Source: Octopus bimaculoides (Eukaryota). From it: DNA of 64,000 nucleotides. Positions 6,104-60,195 of the stretch are shown one piece after another. The stretch covers positions 37,152,828 to 37,216,827 of the forward strand of contig NC_068984.1 in NCBI RefSeq assembly GCF_001194135.2, in the 5' to 3' direction. The first letter of the stretch is position 1. Every line of letters begins with the position of its first letter. The notes under the pieces are model-generated. The model was not told the DNA's origin. It saw only the letters and a list, made by a program, of their open reading frames with translations, and searched no databases. The position numbers and the translations under genes are program-made.

Positions 6104-7274
6104 TGTATTCTTAATTGATAGCACTTCCAAGATTTTTCATATTTTCTTTCGATTTCGAATTCATCACAGTGAGGGTTTATATATATTTGCAAAGAAATGA
6201 GAGTTATATACGTTCACACATGCGCGCAAGCATAATGTACATAGTNNNNNNNNNNNNNNNNNNNNNNNNNNNNNNNNNNNNNNNNNNNNNNNNNNNNNNN
6301 NNNNNNNNNNNNNNNNNNNNNNNNNNNNNNNNNNNNNNNNNNNNNNNNNNNNNNNNNNNNNNNNNNNNNNNNNNNNNNNNNNNNNNNNNNNNNNNNNNNN
6401 NNNNNNNNNNNNNNNNNNNNNNNNNNNNNNNNNNNNNNNNNNNNNNNNNNNNNNNNNNNNNNNNNNNNNNNNNNNNNNNNNNNNNNNNNNNNNNNNNNNN
6501 NNNNNNNNNNNNNNNNNNNNNNNNNNNNNNNNNNNNNNNNNNNNNNNNNNNNNNNNNNNNNNNNNNNNNNNNNNNNNNNNNNNNNNNNNNNNNNNNNNNN
6601 NNNNNNNNNNNNNNNNNNNNNNNNNNNNNNNNNNNNNNNNNNNNNNNNNNNNNNNNNNNNNNNNNNNNNNNNNNNNNNNNNNNNNNNNNNNNNNNNNNNN
6701 NNNNNNNNNNNNNNNNNNNNNNNNNNNNNNNNNNNNNNNNNNNNNNNNNNNNNNNNNNNNNNNNNNNNNNNNNNNNNNNNNNNNNNNNNNNNNNNNNNNN
6801 NNNNNNNNNNNNNNNNNNNNNNNNNNNNNNNNNNNNNNNNNNNNNNNNNNNNNNNNNNNNNNNNNNNNNNNNNNNNNNNNNNNNNNNNNNNNNNNNNNNN
6901 NNNNNNNNNNNNNNNNNNNNNNNNNNNNNNNNNNNNNNNNNNNNNNNNNNNNNNNNNNNNNNNNNNNNNNNNNNNNNNNNNNNNNNNNNNNNNNNNNNNN
7001 NNNNNNNNNNNNNNNNNNNNNNNNNNNNNNNNNNNNNNNNNNNNNNNNNNNNNNNNNNNNNNNNNNNNNNNNNNNNNNNNNNNNNNNNNNNNNNNNNNNN
7101 NNNNNNNNNNNNNNNNNNNNNNNNNNNNNNNNNNNNNNNNNNNNNNNNNNNNNNNNNNNNNNNNNNNNNNNNNNNNNNNNNNNNNNNNNNATATATATAT
7201 ATATATATATAGCTATATATGTACATATATATGCGAACTTTCGATTACTTAAGATATATTTGTCGTATATCAAC

Positions 7275-7930
7275 TACAAACTGCGGAGAAAAAATTCTTT
7301 GTTATAGGAAAAAAGAGGTGTAAAAACAGCGTTGCCCTTTGTCAGATTCCCAGACATCAATGTTTCTACCTCTTAAGATGTTATCAATAGAAAATACCTA
7401 ACAAAGACAATTCTGGACAAACTTAATGAAACCGTGGCTTCAAATAAAATACAGTCAGCTACATTGACTGATTTGCACAAGTAGGCTGTTACTGTCGGGA
7501 AAATTACGACAATAGCAAAAAGAAGTGTCTGTGAATTTTTTCGCCACAATAACTGCAGTGAATTTGTAGTTAGCAGTTGAAATATGTCACAAATGTATTT
7601 TAGCTACCCCAAAGTTCGCCTACGCCAAAACAGTGCTTGGCACCGATATTAGTGTGATTTTCACGACCTTGGCGGCCTACTAGCATGAATAAGTCAATGC
7701 AGTTAACTGTTTTTAGTGAAAACTCCGGCTTGATTAGATCTGTCCAGAGTTGCTTCTCCTTAGTATTTCTCATTGATAACATTTAAGAAGCTAGAAGTAT
7801 CGATGTCTGGGAATCCGACAGACGTCAGCATTGGAGATATATGATGTTTTTACACCTTATTTTTACCATAAGAGAATATATTTTCCCCCACAGTGACTGC
7901 AGTGAATTTCCTTTTAACAGTTGAAAATTT
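7275..7930. repeat. diverged inverted pair of a ~200-250 bp repeat, each arm with a degenerate hammerhead motif (Penelope/retrozyme-like)
   Basis: 7310-7487 aligns to the reverse complement of 7674-7865; arms contain ttct(c)a-TTGATAA-..-GAA(AC/GT)-at(t/c)gat-GTC-tgggaa. Confidence 0.65.
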
Positions 7931-13412: not shown

Positions 13413-14253
13413 NNNNNNNNNNNNNNNNNNNNNNNNNNNNNNNNNNNNNNNNNNNNNNNNNNNNNNNNNNNNNNNNNNNNNNNNNNNNNNNNNNNNNNNN
13501 NNNNNNNNNNNNNNNNNNNNNNNNNNNNNNNNNNNNNNNNNNNNNNNNNNNNNNNNNNNNNNNNNNNNNNNNNNNNNNNNNNNNNNNNNNNNNNNNNNNN
13601 NNNNNNNNNNNNNNNNNNNNNNNNNNNNNNNNNNNNNNNNNNNNNNNNNNNNNNNNNNNNNNNNNNNNNNNNNNNNNNNNNNNNNNNNNNNNNNNNNNNN
13701 NNNNNNNNNNNNNNNNNNNNNNNNNNNNNNNNNNNNNNNNNNNNNNNNNNNNNNNNNNNNNNNNNNNNNNNNNNNNNNNNNNNNNNNNNNNNNNNNNNNN
13801 NNNNNNNNNNNNNNNNNNNNNNNNNNNNNNNNNNNNNNNNNNNNNNNNNNNNNNNNNNNNNNNNNNNNNNNNNNNNNNNNNNNNNNNNNNNNNNNNNNNN
13901 NNNNNNNNNNNNNNNNNNNNNNNNNNNNNNNNNNNNNNNNNNNNNNNNNNNNNNNNNNNNNNNNNNNNNNNNNNNNNNNNNNNNNNNNNNNNNNNNNNNN
14001 NNNNNNNNNNNNNNNNNNNNNNNNNNNNNNNNNNNNNNNNNNNNNNNNNNNNNNNNNNNNNNNNNNNNNNNNNNNNNNNNNNNNNNNNNNNNNNNNNNNN
14101 NNNNNNNNNNNNNNNNNNNNNNNNNNNNNNNNNNNNNNNNNNNNNNNNNNNNNNNNNTTATAACGAATAATAATAATAATAATAATGATAATAATAATGA
14201 TAATAATAAGAGAAATTAAGATAAATAGACCAGATATAGCTGTCAAAGATCAT

Positions 14254-18885: not shown

Positions 18886-19531
18886 CACTCTGAAAGATAG
18901 TTTTCTGCAAGTTATGAACAAAGAAAGGCTGCTCGCATGTAATTTCCGAAACTACTCTTCCTACACACAAAACTTCTTTTCACAACAAATTTCTATATAA
19001 ACGATATCTACACCATCTGAAGCGTATTTCAAGAGTATATCTGTAAGATATATCAAATGTTCTAGACATTATGAAGAGGGAACAATATGAGGACACGCAT
19101 GTGTAGGTATGCCTAGCAACGGAATATTATTTCTTAGGAGAACGCCTTAACAGTTGATTTTAATATTAAAAAAAACACTGGTCAATAAATTCAGAATATC
19201 AATAGAAAAAAGTGTATGAAACATAAATTGTGATAGAAGTTGTAGATATATCCGAAGATGCAATGTTTGCCAGATAAAAACTCAAATGACATGCGCACAA
19301 ACTGTAGCAGGCGACGAATGCTTTGCTCCGGCCGAATCCGCAGGTTATTGTATATCATTGCGCGTGTGTTACTGGAAATCCATAAGAAATGTTTTTTTAC
19401 AGATATACTCTTCAAATACGCTTCAAATGGTGTAGATATCTTTTATATAGAAATTTGTTGTGAAAAAAAGTTTTGTGTGTAGGGAGAGAAGTTTCGGAAA
19501 ATACATGCGAGGAGCCTTTCTTCGCTCATAA
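18886..19531. mobile_element. foldback/MITE with TIRs of at least 135 bp; right end in a gap
   Basis: 18912-19046 is the near-exact reverse complement of 19396-19530. Confidence 0.75.
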
Positions 19532-21285
19532 NNNNNNNNNNNNNNNNNNNNNNNNNNNNNNNNNNNNNNNNNNNNNNNNNNNNNNNNNNNNNNNNNNNNN
19601 NNNNNNNNNNNNNNNNNNNNNNNNNNNNNNNNNNNNNNNNNNNNNNNNNNNNNNNNNNNNNNNNNNNNNNNNNNNNNNNNNNNNNNNNNNNNNNNNNNNN
19701 NNNNNNNNNNNNNNNNNNNNNNNNNNNNNNNNNNNNNNNNNNNNNNNNNNNNNNNNNNNNNNNNNNNNNNNNNNNNNNNNNNNNNNNNTATATATATATA
19801 TATCTTCCGATTGTAAAGAGATTACAAACGATGATAGAAGTCCAAATACATGTTTAAGGAGACCATATAAAGCATTTGAATTCTTTCTGTGAAGTACATT
19901 TTGAACATCCAATATTTGTGACCACAACGTGTTTTTAATCTATTAAAATCTCGCTAGAGCTCTGATCTCTGCGACTTAGAGGAGTTATACAGACTTTATA
20001 TTCTTTGCACTTAGATCAAATGAAATCCTGTGAATAGATTGTTTTCCCCCAACAGCTGGCATATTTCATTCTTATTGTTGTCAAACCAGTCTCTGTGTAT
20101 CTTTCTGTTGATTCCGAAGATAGTGCTGCCCAAATCTGATCCTTGAAATTCTTCCAAGTTCTATCAAAACTAATATCATTGAACTTGCTTTGAACAAGTT
20201 CCAATATATTTGATAGAGTTAATTTATCAACATCAATTCGCTTTGGTACTTTTCCACTGTTCATGAGAATTCTCTTCCGAACCCGAAATTTGAATTAAGC
20301 CGTATTCGTTTATGATCACTAACACAATCTATGCCGTGTAAACACATAGATTACAGACTTCCTGCAAATCAGAATTTGGAGTAAGAATAAAATCAATAAT
20401 GTGACCTTGCCTTGATTATGGATTTGTCCATGTTATTTGATACCTAGCAAAAGTGTTTAAAATGTTTAAATTAATTTCGGAGCAAAGTTGAAATGCAATC
20501 AGTTACTATTCTCATGATCAATGCCATGGCGGCCAAACGAACCCCTAATCTGAAATTGCCCGCCAGTACGAGCATTAAACTCTCCCAGAATCATAAGTTA
20601 ATTTTTCTAGGAAGGTGTAACATAATTGATATTTGGGAATGACTTGTAGATAGATTACATTCTCATTTACCTGAAGAGTTGATACATACACAGAAAACAA
20701 CCCCAAATATTTTCCAACCACAAATATTTTGAACCCAAATGAAGCTTCTGTCAAATGATCTTCACGAGAAGTGGAGTTTCTTAAGGCGTTATTACATATA
20801 CGGTGAAACTTTGCAGTTATTTAACCACAAGTTCAGTCAGACATTCAGGACAATTCGCATGATCTAGAAGCGATCTTGTATTCCAACAGCAGATGTTAGA
20901 AATGTCATTTTACCTTCAGAATAAAGTCTAGCGTTAAATCATTTTTCTTTTCTGAATTTGATGAACTGCCACCAATTGCATTTAACTAACCAGCTTAAGG
21001 GGAAAGGCAGAGTTTAGTGCAGATTTTCTAGCACATTCCAAGACACAGAGTGAATGGGTGAGCAGTGCGTCCTAAAACACGGTTTCTCGGACACAAAGAA
21101 CTACATTGAATCCCGTGAACGTCCGCGATTTCATGAGTCCTGCTTTTGAGATACATTGTCCACTAATCAACCTCGTCAACAAAACTGGCTCGTAAGATTG
21201 TCAGTTTAGTCACCGACAACCCGACCGCGCAACAGGTTGTTCTGGATTACACGCAACCGTAGTATTTTATAGTGACCTGATAATA

Positions 21286-22435: not shown

Positions 22436-22975
22436 NNNNNNNNNNNNNNNNNNNNNNNNNNNNNNNNNNNNNNNNNNNNNNNNNNNNNNNNNNNNNNNNN
22501 NNNNNNNNNNNNNNNNNNNNNNNNNNNNNNNNNNNNNNNNNNNNNNNNNNNNNNNNNNNNNNNNNNNNNNNNNNNNNNNNNNNNNNNNNNNNNNNNNNNN
22601 NNNNNNNNNNNNNNNNNNNNNNNNNNNNNNNNNNNNNNNNNNNNNNNNNNNNNNNNNNNNNNNNNNNNNNNNNNNNNNNNNNNNNNNNNNNNNNNNNNNN
22701 NNNNNNNNNNNNNNNNNNNNNNNNNNNNNNNNNNNNNNNNNNNNNNNNNNNNNNNNNNNNNNNNNNNNNNNNNNNNNNNNNNNNNNNNNNNNNNNNNNNN
22801 NNNNNNNNNNNNNNNNNNNNNNNNNNNNNNNNNNNNNNNNNNNNNNNNNNNNNNNNNNNNNNNNNNNNNNNNNNNNNNNNNNNNNNNNNNNNNNNNNNNN
22901 NNNNNNNNNNNNNNNNNNNNNNNNNNNNNNNNNNNNNNNNNNNNNNNNNNNNNNNNNNNNNNNNNNNNNNNNNNN

Positions 22976-23989: not shown

Positions 23990-25173
23990 TTTAACACCAA
24001 TCAAATTTCATTGTGCTTTTTTTTTGTATTGTAGATGGTTTTATTTATCTAATTTAATGCTTATGTCTATCACTTTTTCAGACTGTAGTATAAATTAAGC
24101 TAAGATGCGTAACCTCACCGAGTTCGAAAAAGCGCAAATTGTTAGAGCTCGAATGGAAGGAGTTTCCGTCACCAGAAAAGCTGGACTTCTTGGTTTTTCG
24201 AGAGCTAGCATATCAAGGACTGTGACTGAATTTGAGAAGCAGAGCAAAGCCTGCATCAGGAGGCGTAAGTCCGACAGGGCTTCGAAGCTCACTGAAAGAG
24301 GCCAACGACTGTTGAATCTCCTTGTGACGAAAAATTACCGGACAACTGCCCCTAAATTGACTGCAGAGTTGAATCAACATCTGACTAGTCCAGTTTTCAT
24401 CAAAAATGTTCGCCGTGAGCTGAATAAAGCCAGATATCATGGAAGAACCACCATGAAGAAACCTCTGCCTTTTCATCAAAACATTTAGAAAGGGCTGAAC
24501 TGGTGTAGAGATCACAAGAGTTGGTCAAAAGACCAATGGAAGCAAGTAGTATTCTCCGACATGTTCACTTGTTCTCTTTTCCCCACTGCAGGACGAGTTT
24601 ATGTGTGGAGGTAGGCCGGGAAGCTTTTAATTCTGACTGCCTTCTTCCTACAGTGGACCATGGAGGAGGTTTGGGCAGCATTTTCTTGGAATTCTCTTGG
24701 TCAAATCGCTTCCCTTCGTAGTAGGACCAACAGCAATGATTATTTGAATATTTTTGGAAATCAAGTCTTTCCCATGGTCCGGACATTATTCCCCGATGGT
24801 GAGGACAGCTTCCAAGATGACGATGCTCCAATACACACCTCTCATGTGGTTGAAAATTGGTATGAGGTGCATAGTAATGAGCTACAATACATAGAATGCC
24901 CACCGCCTCAATCTCCAGGTCTTAATATTATTGAGCATCTGTGGTGCATCTTAGAGTGACAAGTTAGAAGTAGTTACCTTCTACCGTCGTGTCTGCAACA
25001 GCTGGAGCAGGTTTTGCAAGAAGAATGGATCAAGATTCCACTCAATGAAGTCAAGAATCTGTATTAATCAATTCCTAGATGCATCGAAGCTGCTCACAAA
25101 GATAAAGGAGGATCATATTTAATTCATATTCATTGAATTTAACACATGTTCCAATTATTTTGTCCAACCTCTG
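23990..25173 (+). pseudogene. Tc1-superfamily transposon, near full-length transposase pseudogene
   Basis: ORF pieces MRNLTEFEKAQIV.., WKQVVFSD, FQDDDAPIH, PQSPGLNIIEHLW; 3' TIR ccaattattttgtccaacctctg+TA; 5' TIR not seen. Confidence 0.92.
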
Positions 25174-32885: not shown

Positions 32886-33335
32886 TCATAGAGGAGGAGT
32901 AGTTCATAGAAAGGAGTAGGGGGAGAGGGAGGTAAAGTTGTAGGAAGTAGAGAAGTGAGGGTAGGGGGCGTTGGTAATGAACCCAGCAAATAGATGACTG
33001 TTTAAAATTTTGAAATGATTTATTAACAGCAATATGCTTTCAAACTATTAAGCCGGGATTTAAAAATGCAGCTGCATCTGCACAGATAGGAAAATAGTAT
33101 TAATGACGAGGTCGCAAAGATGCGACTTAATACTTCTTAATGTTTAGACAAAATTGAATATAGCTGTCTGGGAAATTTGAATAACTATCATGACACTTCA
33201 GTTTATATCTGTGTACGTGCACGTATGTGCGTGTGTGTATATATATTATATAAATATGAATATAATTATATATATATACGTATATATGTATATATATATG
33301 TATACATACATTCATATATGTATGCATATATATAC

Positions 33336-33373
<38 letters not shown>

Positions 33374-33607
33374 NNNNNNNNNNNNNNNNNNNNNNNNNNN
33401 NNNNNNNNNNNNNNNNNNNNNNNNNNNNNNNNNNNNNNNNNNNNNNNNNNNNNNNNNNNNNNNNNNNNNNNNNNNNNNNNNNNNNNNNNNNNNNNNNNNN
33501 NNNNNNNNNNNNNNNNNNNNNNNNNNNNNNNNNNNNNNNNNNNNNNNNNNNNNNNNNNNNNNNNNNNNNNNNNNNNNNNNNNNNNNNNNNNNNNNNNNNN
33601 NNNNNNN

Positions 33608-34040
33608 AGTATATATAGTAGGTATAATAAAATGAAATGAAGTATTGATTGTTTTATTGAATAAATGAAATATTGAATATCAGATATTAAAGAACGTGCT
33701 TGCTGACGGCGAGGTACGTTAGCCCGTCTCCGTCGGTTAGCCGTGCCTGCGCTTTCGTGGAGCGACGGGCCCGGTCGAGAGAAGTGGGTGGGTCCCGACG
33801 CCGGCCGGTCGCGAGGTCGACGGTGGCAGGGGGAGGGGGGGTTATCTGGCACCTGCGGACGCCACGCGCCTAACCGACCCGACGGGAACGGGTCGCGACG
33901 ATGGATCGGAGATGAAGTGCGTCCGATGCCGGTCGGAGGGGAAGCACATCCTTTAATATTTGATATTCAATATTTCATTAATTCAATAAGACAATCAATA
34001 CTTCATTTCATTTTAACTATACCTACTATATATATATACT
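33608..34040. mobile_element. unclassified foldback element: ~94-bp AT-rich TIRs around a 240-bp GC-rich core
   Basis: 33608-33701 versus reverse complement of 33942-34040 differ at about 7 positions plus a TA-repeat indel. Confidence 0.8.
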
Positions 34041-34189
34041 ATATATTCTATATCTTACATTAAGATTATAAGAATATAAATAAAACATAAAAAAACAGAC
34101 AGGGTTGGAATTCCTTTCAATCATATATATTTATATATGTGTGTGTGTGTGTATGTATCATATACGTACGTATATATACATATATCTGT

Positions 34190-35029
34190 ATATATTATCA
34201 TTATTAATAAATCATAGGGCAGCAACAAAATTTTAGAAATTTAATTTACCACCAGTGGTCCAGCGAGAATAAAAATGAGTCAATAGACTATATATATATT
34301 ATTCATTTGAAATACAGAGATGCCTATAATAGGACATCTAACCCGCTAGAAAGAGCAGCAAAAAACTCTATACCACAAAAATAGGGATAATTTCGAAAGA
34401 GAATGAAAAATAAAAACTTTTACCAGTCTATACTCTGTACCATGGTTTCAAGTTATTTAGCAAGATAAAAATATATCTTGCTCGATTTTCCCTCAGAAAT
34501 TAGCCAAAAAATATATCTTTTTATTTTTCATTCTCTTTCGAAATTATCCCTATTTTTGTGGTATAGAGTTTTTTGCTGCTCTTTCTAGCGGGTTAGATGT
34601 CCTATTATAGGCATCTCTGTATTTTAAATGAATAATATATATATATAGTCTATTGACTAATTTTTATTCTTGCTGGACCACTGGTGGTAAATTGAATTTC
34701 TAAAATTTTTTTTGCTGCCCTATGATTTATTACTAATGATAATATATTTTTTGGCTAATTTCTGAGGGAAAATCGGCATTTGTTTTATATTTACTGCCGA
34801 TAAGTTAAACCGCACATGCGCGGTAAATTTTGAAAAAATAAGCATGTAAGCACAAGTGTTTTCCTATGACTCGTGTTTACACGCTGTTCCGGTACTCTGC
34901 TGAAGATAGTCCCCGAGCAAGATATATTTTTATCTTACTAAATAACTTGAAACCATGGTACAGAGTATAGACTGGTAAAAGTTTTTAATTGTCATTCTCT
35001 TTCGAAATTATCCCAATTTTTGTGGTATA
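34190..35029. repeat. permuted inverted repeat array (A-B-C / inverted A-C-D-B-A'), Penelope pseudo-LTR/retrozyme-like
   Basis: 34190-34416 = rc(34518-34747); 34483-34516 = rc(34742-34775); 34370-34484 = rc(34914-35029). Confidence 0.85.
34893..34967 (+). ncRNA. type I hammerhead ribozyme-like motif
   Basis: tactctg-CTGAAGA-..-GAAAC-catg-GTA-cagagta: perfect 7-bp stem I, intact core, palindromic loop III. Confidence 0.65.
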
Positions 35030-35140
35030 TCTGTATATATATGTGTGTGTGTGTATGCATATATATATTTATGTATATACATATAAATGTATACATATGC
35101 ATATATATATATATATATATATCTGTATGTNNNNNNNNNN

Positions 35141-35183
<43 letters not shown>

Positions 35184-35682
35184 TTATTTAAAAGAGTTCC
35201 AACTCTGTTTTTCATGTTTTATTTATATTCTTATAAAATTTATGTGGGATACAGAATATGTAATATAAATAGTAAAATCAAATGAAGTGCTGAATGTCTT
35301 ATTGAATATATGAAATATTGAGTATTAAATATAGAGTATTAAATATATGAGGACTAGTATACTTTCCTGCCTCATGGCAGTCATCAAGGTCCTGTCTGAT
35401 ATTGAAATTACAACGGAGGACCCTTGAATCTAGGTTAGAAACCGGGTCTTTCTTTATCGGCAAGAAATCTTGTAATAAAACTGAATAATGGCATACATAC
35501 ATACATACACACATATATACATACATACATGCATACATACATACATACATACCCTGTTAATGTTGAAGTCCCAATAAAGGATCTTTGAATCTAGGTTAGA
35601 AACCGACACTTTCTCTATTGGCAAGAATCCTTGAAACCTACGTATATACGTACGTATGTATGTGTGCATGTATGTATGTATG

Positions 35683-36050: not shown

Positions 36051-36537
36051 GTAGACAACAAAACCAAGGTTGTATGGAATTTATAGGACATTTATAAAGA
36101 GGAATAGGTATGCCCTTTAGAAAGATGCCAAGGTATTGTTTATCCATTATATAGGTTTTACCTATAATAAGTGCTTCTATTAGTAAGGAAGCAATGATAT
36201 GAGAGGTATTGGTATCCAGAAGCCCCAAGGTGGTAGGTAAAGCTATGTAAGTGGTACGGGAGAACCGAAGTTAAACTCTCGGTTCGATAATAATACGAGT
36301 GAGGAGTCTAATCCGAGTCTTGTGTGAGCATTTTATGTTAAGTAAAATGAGACAAAACCAAGAATGTGTGGAATTTATAGGACATTTATAAAGAGGTATA
36401 GGTATGTCCTTAAGAGAGATACCAAAGAATTGTTTATCCATTATATAGGCGTTACTTGTAATAAGTGTTTGTATTAGCAAAGAAGCAACGATAAGAGAGA
36501 TATTTGTATCCAGAAGATCCAAGATGGTTGTGTAAGT
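36051..36537. repeat. diverged direct duplication, ~190-bp units at ~295-bp period
   Basis: 36051-36238 versus 36349-36537, about 24 substitutions counted by hand. Confidence 0.85.
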
Positions 36538-40628: not shown

Positions 40629-40840
40629 CAGGGTTTCCACAAAGTCTGGGTACCTGGAGTAAATAAAATCATAACATAAACAATTAAATATAACAAATAA
40701 TAATTTCTTAAAATATGTGTTAATCCTCATGTGGGTACATGGAGCAAATAAAATCATAACATAACCAATTAAATATAAGAAATAATAATTTCTGAAAGTA
40801 TGTGTTAATCCCCATGTACCCAGATGTTGTGGACACCATG
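40629..40840. mobile_element. Tc1/mariner-type MITE with an internal ~85-bp tandem duplication
   Basis: TA-flanked TIRs cagggtttccacaaagtctgggtac / gtacccagatgttgtggacaccatg. Confidence 0.85.
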
Positions 40841-43190: not shown

Positions 43191-43714
43191 TTAAGTTGGC
43201 AACTAAGTTCCCGCCGTTTTTTTTAATTTAATTTTTTTAAAAAGGTTTAATAAAAAATAACAACTAATTAATCAATAATGTATTCACCCTTGTTGTTTCT
43301 AACTTTTTCCCAACGTTCAACAAGATTTTCAATACCTCGTTGGTAGAAATCACCCGATTTCGACTCGAAAAATGGATCCAACCAAGCTCTTAATTCTGCA
43401 TCAGTATTGAACGAAACTCCGCGCATAACATTTGAAAGAGATCGAAAGAGGTGGAAATCCGTTGGTGCCAAATTAGAAGAGTACGGAGGGTGTGGTAGCA
43501 CTTCCCAGCCATGCGTTTGAATGGCTTCCTTGGTCATATTGGCGATATGAGGGTGGGCGTTGTCGTGCAGCAGAAGAACTCCATGCTGTCGATTAGGTCT
43601 TTTCCCTTGAATAGACGTGTTGAGTCGTTCCATCTGTTGAACCGTTTGGTTCCGTTCAAGCAATTCGTAATGAATAATCCCTTCTCAGTCCCACCACACG
43701 CACAACATCGATTT
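43191..43714 (-). mobile_element. mariner (DD34D) 3' half, rest in a gap
   Basis: LLHDNAHPH..HPPYSSNLAPTDFHLFRSL..GIENLVERWEKV..GEYIID*; 34 residues between the catalytic Ds; TIR TA+ttaagttggcaactaagttc. Confidence 0.93.
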
Positions 43715-44623
43715 NNNNNNNNNNNNNNNNNNNNNNNNNNNNNNNNNNNNNNNNNNNNNNNNNNNNNNNNNNNNNNNNNNNNNNNNNNNNNNNNNNNNNN
43801 NNNNNNNNNNNNNNNNNNNNNNNNNNNNNNNNNNNNNNNNNNNNNNNNNNNNNNNNNNNNNNNNNNNNNNNNNNNNNNNNNNNNNNNNNNNNNNNNNNNN
43901 NNNNNNNNNNNNNNNNNNNNNNNNNNNNNNNNNNNNNNNNNNNNNNNNNNNNNNNNNNNNNNNNNNNNNNNNNNNNNNNNNNNNNNNNNNNNNNNNNNNN
44001 NNNNNNNNNNNNNNNNNNNNNNNNNNNNNNNNNNNNNNNNNNNNNNNNNNNNNNNNNNNNNNNNNNNNNNNNNNNNNNNNNNNNNNNNNNNNNNNNNNNN
44101 NNNNNNNNNNNNNNNNNNNNNNNNNNNNNNNNNNNNNNNNNNNNNNNNNNNNNNNNNNNNNNNNNNNNNNNNNNNNNNNNNNNNNNNNNNNNNNNNNNNN
44201 NNNNNNNNNNNNNNNNNNNNNNNNNNNNNNNNNNNNNNNNNNNNNNNNNNNNNNNNNNNNNNNNNNNNNNNNNNNNNNNNNNNNNNNNNNNNNNNNNNNN
44301 NNNNNNNNNNNNNNNNNNNNNNNNNNNNNNNNNNNNNNNNNNNNNNNNNNNNNNNNNNNNNNNNNNNNNNNNNNNNNNNNNNNNNNNNNNNNNNNNNNNN
44401 NNNNNNNNNNNNNNNNNNNNNNNNNNNNNNNNNNNNNNNNNNNNNNNNNNNNNNNNNNNNNNNNNNNNNNNNNNNNNNNNNNNNNNNNNNNNNNNNNNNN
44501 NNNNNNNNNNNNNNNNCATGTGTGTTTGTGTGTAGATGTGTTTGTGTGTAGATGTGTTTGTGTGTATGTGTGTGTGTGTTTGTGTGTGTGTGTTTGTGTG
44601 TGTGTGTTTGTGTGTGTTTGTGT

Positions 44624-59296: not shown

Positions 59297-59680
59297 TGTT
59301 TATATCTCGCTCAAAGATTTAATATAACATTCCCTCTCTTCTACGAGATCAGCGACAGTGAATCGCTAGAAAAATATTGAGTAATTTACGAGTGGAATGA
59401 GCTTCCATCACTAGCTGGTGATTAACACATGCTGAGGACGGGTAACCATCAAGAAACTCGAGTCTGTGTGTGTCACGTGAGGCTAGAGATGGGAGCCATG
59501 ACCTCCCGTCGCAAATACTAATCGGACACAGAATGTATGTCGTTAGCCAACTGGAGGAGATGTCTTCCTGACGCTATAAGCATCAGTAGAACGGTCCTGT
59601 ATAGGACGCCACATCTAGTTGCCAAATATATGTTAAGGTTCCGTAGTGCTACTGTTTATATCTCGCTCAGAGATTTAATA
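59297..59680 (+). mobile_element. terminally redundant 356-bp unit carrying one hammerhead (retrozyme-like)
   Basis: 28-bp direct repeats at 59297-59324 and 59653-59680 (1 mismatch). Confidence 0.6.
59425..59471 (+). ncRNA. minimal type I hammerhead ribozyme-like motif
   Basis: acacatg-CTGAGGA-cgggtaaccatcaa-GAAAC-tcga-GTC-tgtgtgt; palindromic ACTCGAGT; stem II imperfect. Confidence 0.65.
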
Positions 59681-59687
59681 AAAGAGA

Positions 59688-59736
<49 letters not shown>

Positions 59737-59818
59737 NNNNNNNNNNNNNNNNNNNNNNNNNNNNNNNNNNNNNNNNNNNNNNNNNNNNNNNNNNNNNNNN
59801 NNNNNNNNNNNNNNNNNN

Positions 59819-60195
59819 AAACCAGACAGTGTTTTGAAAAAACACCCACACAGATTGCACCTCTGATTTGCACTACCAATACCTGCAAGTAAGTTCTGCT
59901 CATTGTGGATCCTAACATGTCTTTTAAGACCCCCATTGGATTTGCAAACCCTCTGGCACACACCACATTCAAACGTGTGCACAGACATGTAATCAGAATA
60001 GCTGGATGAGGTTTGTTTTCCATGGGTTCGCAGGTGAGATTTGAGGCCAGCCAAGGACAGACATGGTCTGTCACAGACTGTGCACACAAAAAGGTCCTTG
60101 TCATTCAACTTCTCAGTCTTTACATTTTTCCTTAAATGTCTCTTGAGCCCTGCTTGCATCATCCTGGCCTCTTCAAATGCTTTCACTCCACTCCA
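59819..60195 (-). mobile_element. 5'-truncated RTE LINE C-terminus with at least 3 C2H2 zinc fingers
   Basis: GVKAFEEAR..KR.. (RTE C-terminal helix), then CTVC-x12-HLRTH, CGVC-x12-HVRIH, CNLC.. cut by a gap; open frame throughout. Confidence 0.75.

What the first reader, a model, noticed from the sequence alone, without database searches (positions are those of the whole stretch)
33608..34040. GC/CpG-rich foldback cassette inside long AT-rich TIRs
A 240-bp core, roughly 70% GC by eye and dense in CpG, sits in otherwise very AT-rich DNA, bracketed by ~94-bp TIRs beginning AGTATATATAGTAGG. The core is itself a diverged palindrome (cccgtctccgtcggttag vs rc cccgtcgggtcggttag) with a central G-run (ggcagggggagggggggg). 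AG..CT ends with long TIRs recall Polinton/Maverick termini, and the core could be a captured promoter, origin or structured RNA. It does not match any family I can name.
Basis: partly seen in the sequence, partly recalled or inferred. Interest (0 to 1): 0.7.

Follow-up and report, generated by a model that had tools for sequence, protein, structure and literature searches.

The report
GC-rich island between long inverted repeats
A real but ordinary-looking relic of a small non-coding mobile DNA element (or a local inverted duplication) in a repeat-rich, gap-ridden eukaryotic assembly; its only odd trait is an orphan 240-bp, 70% GC centre, and the proposed Polinton-like ends are an artefact of an assembly gap.

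Summary
The inverted repeat and the GC-rich centre are real. The arms 33608-33701 and 33942-34040 are 92.5% complementary over 93 nt. The 240-bp core is 70.4% GC against 35% for the window and is the only GC island in 64 kb.

1. The 'AG' start is the first base after a 234-N gap.
2. A third, solo arm at 35181-35335 shows this, so the arms are about 185 nt and the true termini and TSD are unknown.
3. The core is not a palindrome beyond chance and does not fold better than shuffles.

The core shows no coding periodicity. It has no Rfam, Pfam or protein match and no hit in the phage, plasmid, viral, metagenome or prokaryote collections. No polymerase or integrase lies nearby.

The best reading is a decayed non-autonomous long-TIR (MITE/foldback-like) element carrying an orphan GC-rich passenger. 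It is one of at least four short long-IR structures in this window. A local inverted duplication or a chimeric assembly cannot be excluded. No eukaryotic repeat library or host genome was available, so family assignment stays open. Interest is low.

The parts
33374..33607 (.). Assembly gap (234 N) that cuts off the outer part of the left arm and hides the left terminus and any target-site duplication
33608..33701 (+). Left arm, inner 94 nt only (20% GC); contains TATTGA three times at 33643, 33655 and 33671
33702..33941 (.). Orphan GC-rich core: 240 nt, 70.4% GC, CpG o/e 1.31, G>C on the + strand (103 G, 66 C). No coding periodicity, no significant self-complementarity, no database match
33942..34126 (-). 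Right arm, full length about 185 nt (20.5% GC). 33942-34040 mirrors the left arm. 34041-34126 is the outer part, matched only by the solo arm. The exact outer end lies somewhere within 34112-34126
35181..35335 (+). Third, solo copy of the arm: 76-80% identical to the other two, in the left-arm orientation, preceded by an (AG)n tract and a 10-N gap. It is followed by unrelated AT-rich sequence, not by the GC-rich core. Its inner end carries a 14-nt unit x3 (35309-35351)

Best explanation
The feature is a decayed, non-autonomous DNA element of the long-TIR / foldback (MITE-like) kind. Two AT-rich arms of about 185 nt in inverted orientation enclose a 240-bp non-coding passenger of foreign composition.

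Shown: the arms, their extent on the right side, a third diverged arm copy nearby, the compositional step (20% to 70% to 20% GC), the lack of coding or RNA-structure signal, and the lack of relatives in everything searched.

Inferred:
- The arms once served as the recognition ends for a transposase supplied in trans. The short repeated motifs inside the arms are the candidate binding sites.
- The GC-rich centre was picked up as passenger DNA, as happens during gap repair in gene-capturing long-TIR elements.
- With arms now about 7.5% diverged, the copy is an inert relic.
- If it is transcribed by read-through, it would fold into a long hairpin through its arms.
For: - The TIR is highly significant.
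- The arm is a repeat unit seen three times, and the third copy has a different interior. The arms therefore behave as a module separable from the core.
- Both flanks are TA/TG-rich microsatellite-like sequence (33240-33373 and 34127-34189). This is compatible with insertion into one tract.
- The window holds at least three other short structures with long inverted arms (34190-34747, 18912-19531, 7333-7827). It also holds Tc1-like, mariner and LINE fragments. The setting is therefore a TE-rich eukaryotic region where such elements are commonplace.
- The core is non-coding. GC by codon phase is flat at 0.71/0.66/0.74. There is no Pfam hit. There is no protein relative in either fully open frame.
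- Arm subrepeats: TATTGA occurs three times per arm at matching positions, and TRF finds ATTCAATA x3.
Against: - The left terminus and the TSD are unobservable because of the gap.
- Only three arm copies were seen, all within 1.8 kb, and none in the other 62 kb. That clustering fits a local duplication at least as well as a dispersed family.
- No autonomous partner and no transposase-linked copy of the arms was found.
- No parent locus for the core was found.
- No eukaryotic repeat library or host genome could be searched, so copy number, the defining property of a mobile family, is untested.
- The arm motifs were chosen post hoc.
Confidence: 0.5

Rival explanations
1. A local inverted duplication, not a transposon. 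An AT-rich segment of about 185 nt was copied in place by a fold-back or template-switch replication or repair event, twice in inverted orientation around a pre-existing GC-rich patch and once more 1.1 kb downstream.
For: All three arm copies lie within 33608-35335 and none lies elsewhere in 64 kb. The neighbouring 34190-35029 region is itself a nest of inverted duplications, some 97-99% identical. This suggests a locally unstable, palindrome-prone tract. No TSD, transposase or dispersed copy was demonstrated.
Against: It does not explain why a 70% GC patch sits exactly between the arms in 35% GC DNA. The solo arm is much more diverged (76-80%) than the pair (92.5%), as expected for separate copies of a family. 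Similar microsatellite-like sequence on both sides suggests an insertion.
Confidence: 0.25
2. An assembly artefact. The GC-rich core, or its junction with the arms, is a chimeric join or contaminant sequence placed at the start of a short contig (33608-35130) in a draft scaffold.
For: The element begins exactly at a gap edge. The window has 15 gaps, 5220 N in all. The core's composition is foreign to the window and it has no second copy here.
Against: The core is embedded between two host-type arms that are diverged from each other (6 mismatches and 1 indel). A chimeric join or collapsed read would not produce that. There is no match to plasmids or vectors, phages, viral contigs, metagenomes or prokaryotic genomes beyond one hit seeded by the search pattern itself. 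The flat GC by codon phase argues against a high-GC bacterial gene fragment.
Confidence: 0.1
3. A functional GC-rich unit framed by a hairpin: a fragment of rDNA spacer or expansion segment, a CpG-island-like promoter, an origin, or a structured or small-RNA-producing locus.
For: CpG is not depleted in the core (o/e 1.31, against 0.80 for the window). There is a sharp compositional island. The arms would make a long double-stranded stem in any transcript.
Against: There is no Rfam family at gathering score in the window and none for rRNA or any plausible RNA at E <= 10 in the region. There is no tRNA. Core folding is no better than shuffles and there is no canonical G4. A CpG o/e of 1.31 lies below the window's 95th percentile for 240-bp windows, which is 1.44. 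Similarity to the host's own rDNA spacer could not be tested.
Confidence: 0.08
4. A Polinton/Maverick-related terminus or miniature derivative.
For: Only the long TIRs and the apparent AG..CT ends.
Against: The AG is a gap edge and the CT is internal to the arm. The element is about 0.5-0.6 kb. The window has no ORF of 110 aa or more, outside gaps and microsatellites, other than Tc1/mariner/LINE fragments. No coding signal lies within 31-38.5 kb. Intact Mavericks are defined by about 8 conserved ORFs, TIRs, 6-bp TSDs and repeated AG/AGT end motifs (PMC8097293).
Confidence: 0.02

Closest known systems
MITEs / non-autonomous TIR DNA transposons
   Same: Short (about 0.5-0.6 kb), non-coding, bounded by inverted repeats, AT-rich ends, able to fold into a hairpin, and lying in TE-rich DNA next to microsatellites.
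   Different: The arms (about 185 nt) are far longer than typical MITE TIRs. The TSD and copy number are unknown. No parent transposon was identified. The 70% GC interior is atypical.
Foldback (FB-type) elements (from general knowledge of Drosophila FB and similar elements)
   Same: Long inverted arms make up most of the element. There are short repeated motifs inside the arms (TATTGA x3 per arm; 8-nt and 14-nt tandem units). The middle region is variable: the solo copy has a different interior.
   Different: The arm subrepeats are few and weak (TRF scores 36-63). The arm length is modest. No family-level evidence is available.
Pack-MULE-type gene-capturing long-TIR elements (PMC5861414)
   Same: Long AT-rich TIRs frame a passenger that is much more GC-rich than its surroundings. 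[quoted passage not shown]
   Different: Pack-MULEs are defined in plants, by 8-11 bp TSDs, TIR similarity to an autonomous MULE and an identifiable parental gene. None of these could be shown here. The passenger has no coding signal and no parent was found.
Tc1-like elements with long IR/DR ends and their deletion derivatives (from general knowledge: Minos, S, Tc3 and Sleeping Beauty-type ends of about 200-460 nt)
   Same: The arm length class is about 200 nt, with repeated internal motifs. Tc1-like and mariner transposase fragments are present in the same window.
   Different: There is no sequence similarity between the arms and anything near those transposase fragments. The TA TSD and terminal motif are unobservable.
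Polinton/Maverick
   Same: Long TIRs only.
   Different: The size differs by about 30-fold. There are no genes. The end motif is an artefact and the TSD is unknown.

Membership tests
Polinton/Maverick | 15-20 kb unit encoding protein-primed DNA polymerase, integrase, capsid and packaging genes (PMC8097293) | tested here: not met
   The element spans about 0.5-0.6 kb. Both fully open frames of the core lack any Pfam or protein relative. No substantial ORF lies within 31-38.5 kb. The long ORFs of the window are SSR or gap artefacts or Tc1/mariner/LINE fragments.
Polinton/Maverick | Terminal AG/AGT...CT/ACT end motifs at the true ends of the TIRs | tested here: not met
   33608 is the first base after an N-run. 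The right arm's homology continues 86 nt beyond 34040.
Polinton/Maverick | 6-bp target-site duplication | not testable with these tools
   The left terminus lies in the 234-N gap.
MITE / non-autonomous TIR transposon | Short, non-coding, with terminal inverted repeats | tested here: met
MITE / non-autonomous TIR transposon | Flanking target-site duplication of family-specific length | not testable with these tools
   The left end is hidden by the gap. The right end is only bracketed to 34112-34126.
MITE / non-autonomous TIR transposon | Multiple dispersed copies in the genome | tested here: inconclusive
   There are three arm copies, all within 1.8 kb, and none elsewhere in the window. No copy was found in the viral or metagenome collections. 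The host genome was not available.
Foldback-type element | Long inverted arms built of short subrepeats, with a variable middle | tested here: inconclusive
   The arms are about 185 nt against a 240-nt middle. Only weak subrepeats are present. The solo copy has a different interior.
Pack-MULE-type capture element | Passenger derived from an identifiable parental gene; 8-11 bp TSD; TIRs shared with an autonomous MULE (PMC5861414) | tested here: inconclusive
   No parent or relative of the core was found in any collection searched, but none of these holds the host genome. The TSD is untestable. No MULE transposase is present in the window.
rRNA / catalogued structured RNA | Match to an Rfam covariance model | tested here: not met
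   There are no matches at gathering score in the window. At E <= 10 in 33608-34120 only five chance-level hits appear, none to rRNA. There is no tRNA. rDNA spacers are not covered by Rfam.

The most novel reading that the evidence does not exclude
The core is a genuine transduplicated fragment. That is, a long-TIR element in an animal genome captured a GC-rich, CpG-rich piece of host (or foreign) DNA in the way Pack-MULEs do in grasses. The arm module would then carry different passengers at different loci, and the solo arm's different interior would be a second example.
Probability: 0.12. Interest if true: 0.45.

Novelty: new member of a known kind. Interest (0 to 1): 0.2.

Why it matters
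As it stands this matters little. It is one more unclassified short inverted-repeat element in a repeat-dense draft assembly. The practical lesson is that termini read at a gap edge must not be used for classification. If genome-wide data showed the same arms carrying different GC-rich passengers, it would be an animal example of systematic sequence capture by a long-TIR element. It would also be a local source of GC/CpG islands and hairpin transcripts, which would be of moderate interest to transposon biologists.

Tried and rejected
- **Core as structured RNA or palindrome: rejected.** Folding z is +1.25 and -0.59. An internal inverted-repeat shuffle test had 55 of 300 shuffles doing as well. 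There is no G4 motif.
- **Core as rRNA, tRNA or a known ncRNA:** no Rfam or ARAGORN hit.
- **Core as a coding fragment:**
  - Both fully open frames were searched. The + frame against 5.8e9 proteins gave none. The - frame against 1.84e9 representatives with full HMMER gave none. Pfam gave none.
  - GC is flat across codon phases.
- **Core or arms as contaminant, vector, phage or virus:** plasmids and phages by blastn gave none. Exact-pattern and back-translated scans of viral contigs gave none.
- **Metagenome contigs:** the arm pattern and the core peptides gave none.
- **Prokaryotic genomes:** one hit (L001, a Nanopelagicales MAG). It owes its score to the 8-residue seed pattern and has only 26 nt of 81% DNA similarity. 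I rejected it as chance.
- **Finding the source contig or other host copies by exact ORF look-up:** four window ORFs were tried and none is on record.
- **Host identification through window proteins:**
  - The C2H2 ORF has a single 40% relative next to RVT_1 ORFs, which marks a LINE tail.
  - The mariner fragment's best hits are unnamed ENA proteins and nematode UniRef entries at 82-86%. This is uninformative because mariners spread horizontally.
  - The host stays unidentified. Its composition and microsatellite load are those of an AT-rich invertebrate-type genome, which is an inference only.
- **Arms related to the Tc1-like or mariner copies in the window:** no similarity.

Full report
**Setting**

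The window is AT-rich (35% GC) and carries 15 N-runs totalling 5220 bases. Strict microsatellites of period 6 or less cover 4.6% of the non-N sequence, and many of them abut gaps. It holds fragments of several transposons:
- a Tc1-like transposase N-terminus (24105-24488);
- a mariner catalytic fragment (43268-43663);
- a C2H2 zinc-finger ORF (59656-60186), whose only relative sits just downstream of reverse-transcriptase ORFs in an ENA contig.

This is a draft eukaryotic scaffold, and the organism could not be identified with the collections on hand.

**What is at the coordinates**

The inverted repeat is real:
- 33628-33701 pairs with 33942-34015 (74 nt, 93%), and 33610-33632 pairs with 34012-34034.
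- As one gapped alignment this is 86/93 identical with one indel, in-window E 2.6e-33.
- The 433-nt stretch folds as single-stranded DNA at -126.9 kcal/mol, against -56.6 +/- 4.2 for shuffles (z = -16.9). The centroid structure shows that the long stem comes from the arms.

The centre is also real:
- 33702-33941 is 240 nt and 70.4% GC, with 37 CpG against 28.3 expected.
- Its CpG o/e is 1.31, against 0.80 for the rest of the window.
- The three GC-richest 240-bp windows in the 64 kb all fall in it, and the next best reaches only 54%.
- The arms are 20% GC, so the composition steps by 50 points at each junction.

**What is not as described**

1. The 'AG' start is not a terminus. Base 33608 is the first base after the 234-N gap 33374-33607.
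2. The 'CT' end at 34040 is not a terminus either.
   - A third copy of the arm lies at 35181-35335 in left-arm orientation. It is 76-80% identical to the other two.
   - The right arm's similarity to it runs on outward to about 34126. The outer 86 nt taken alone match 35181-35259 at 79.8% over 84 columns, E 1e-16.
   - The arm unit is therefore about 185 nt. The corresponding outer left arm must lie in the gap or be missing. The true ends and any target-site duplication are unknown.
3. The core is not a palindrome beyond chance.
   - Its best internal inverted repeat scores 9.5 against 8.5 +/- 1.2 for dinucleotide shuffles, and 55 of 300 shuffles do as well.
   - Its RNA folding energy is no better than shuffles on either strand (z = +1.25 and -0.59).
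   - The G-run gives no canonical G-quadruplex pattern.

**What the core is not**

- It is not a known RNA. There is no Rfam family at gathering score in the whole window. At E <= 10 the region gives only five chance-level hits to unrelated families and none to rRNA. There is no tRNA.
- It does not look coding. Two frames are open across the core, as expected at 70% GC, but GC is flat across codon phases at 0.71/0.66/0.74.
  - Neither open frame has a Pfam match.
  - The + frame has no relative among 5.8 billion proteins.
  - The - frame has no relative among 1.84 billion representatives read exhaustively by HMMER.
- It matches nothing in plasmids or phages by blastn, in viral contigs or in metagenome contigs.
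- The one prokaryotic 'hit' is an artefact of the 8-residue seed used to find it.
- The core has no second copy in the window.
- The arm pattern is absent from viral and metagenome contigs.
- None of these collections holds eukaryotic repeat libraries or the host genome. The nulls therefore exclude contaminants and prokaryotic or viral origins much better than they exclude a catalogued host repeat or a host rDNA spacer.

**Neighbourhood**

No ORF with any coding signal lies between 31 and 38.5 kb. Immediately to the right sits a different, younger foldback structure.
- Its arms are about 34190-34416 and 34518-34747, 84-99% complementary in three collinear blocks, with a 101-nt loop.
- A further inverted partial copy lies at 34914-35029 (116 nt, 97%).

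Two more short long-IR structures occur in the window:
- 18912-19046 with 19397-19531 (135 nt, 93%); the right arm again ends at a gap.
- 7333-7449 with 7711-7827 (117 nt, 71%).

Their spacers are 31-40% GC. Long-armed short inverted-repeat elements are thus common here, and only the 70% GC centre sets the finding apart.

**Most likely explanation (confidence about 0.5)**

The feature is a decayed non-autonomous long-TIR (MITE/foldback-like) element carrying an orphan GC-rich passenger.
- The arms behave as a module separable from the interior, because the solo copy continues into unrelated AT-rich sequence.
- The paired arms are much more alike (92.5%) than either is to the solo arm (76-80%). 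That is what one expects of two ends of one insertion compared with a separate copy.
- Both flanks are similar TA/TG-rich microsatellite-like sequence, as if one tract had been interrupted.
- Each arm carries TATTGA three times at mirrored positions and short tandem units. These are candidate protein-binding subrepeats, but they were picked post hoc.

The mechanism is inferred rather than shown: a transposase acting in trans on the arms, capture of the passenger during repair, present inertness, and hairpin formation if transcribed.

**Rivals**

- **Local inverted duplication (about 0.25).** This is a serious rival. All three arms lie within 1.8 kb and none lies in the remaining 62 kb, and the adjoining DNA is itself a nest of near-identical inverted duplications.
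- **Chimeric assembly or contaminant core (about 0.1).** The gap edge and the foreign composition suggest it. Against it, the core sits between two mutually diverged host-type arms, and it has no contaminant match.
- **Functional GC island, rDNA fragment or RNA locus (about 0.08).** This has no positive evidence.
- **Polinton/Maverick link (about 0.02).** It rested only on ends that prove to be artefacts. The defining gene set, size and end motifs (PMC8097293) are not met.

**Comparison with known kinds**

The architecture is that of a MITE or foldback element. The combination of long AT-rich TIRs with a much more GC-rich passenger is most like gene-capturing Pack-MULEs. Those preferentially duplicate GC-rich sequence and create sharp local GC transitions (PMC5861414). 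Membership cannot be claimed, because the TSD, the autonomous partner and the parental locus are all unavailable. Tc1-like elements with about 200-nt IR/DR ends are another formal possibility, but the arms share nothing with the Tc1 and mariner fragments in the window.

**Verdict**

This is a real feature of a known, ordinary kind. It is unclassified for want of the right library, and its ends are hidden by a gap. Interest is low (0.2). The most novel reading still open is systematic capture of GC-rich DNA by this arm module in an animal genome, which I put at about 0.12 probability.

Noticed in passing
window 34190-34747 and 34914-35029: A second, unrelated foldback structure lies directly to the right of the finding. 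Its arms of about 227 nt are complementary in three collinear blocks (58 nt 84%, 76 nt 95%, 128 nt 99%) around a 101-nt loop. A 34-nt perfect inverted pair lies at 34483-34516 / 34742-34775. A further inverted partial copy (116 nt, 97%) at 34914-35029 runs into microsatellite and a 10-N gap. The near-identity suggests a young element or an assembly duplication.
   Followed up: partly
window 18912-19531: An inverted repeat of 135 nt at 93% (18912-19046 / 19397-19531) with a 350-nt spacer of 35% GC. The right arm ends exactly at the gap 19532-19788, so its terminus is hidden by a gap as well.
   Followed up: no
window 7333-7827: An older inverted repeat, 117-nt arms at 71% complementarity with a 261-nt spacer (40% GC). 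It may be another decayed MITE-like element.
   Followed up: no
window 35309-35351 and 35399-35636: The solo arm ends in a 14-nt unit repeated three times. Downstream, a 77-nt unit occurs twice (35399-35475 and 35560-35636, 78%) on either side of an (ACAT)n tract.
   Followed up: no
window 43268-43663 (-): A mariner-type transposase C-terminal fragment (Pfam DDE_3), cut off by the gap starting at 43715. Its best relatives are 86% (unnamed ENA protein) and 82% (UniRef 'Mariner Mos1 transposase', Heterorhabditis bacteriophora). This fits a horizontally spreading mariner lineage and does not identify the host.
   Followed up: partly
window 24105-24488 (+): A Tc1-like transposase N-terminal ORF (weak HTH_Tnp_Tc3_2 / HTH_29 matches, below the Pfam cut-offs). 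No intact catalytic domain was seen among ORFs of 110 aa or more.
   Followed up: no
window 59656-60186 (-); L002 3645-5552: A C2H2 zinc-finger ORF running into a gap. Its single database relative (40% identity) lies immediately downstream of RVT_1 ORFs on an ENA contig, so it is probably the C-terminal part of a LINE ORF2.
   Followed up: partly
window, all 15 N-runs (e.g. 6246-7190, 13413-14157, 22436-22975, 43715-44516): The gaps examined are bordered by microsatellites: (TA)n before 33374, (GT)n before 22436, and (AG)n after 35140. The assembly evidently breaks at SSRs. Any feature that 'starts' or 'ends' at a gap in this scaffold is suspect.
   Followed up: partly
window 36058-36528 and 40647-40816: Two local direct repeats: 177 nt x2 at 86% (spacing 294) and 85 nt x2 in tandem at 92%. 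Their nature is unknown.
   Followed up: no
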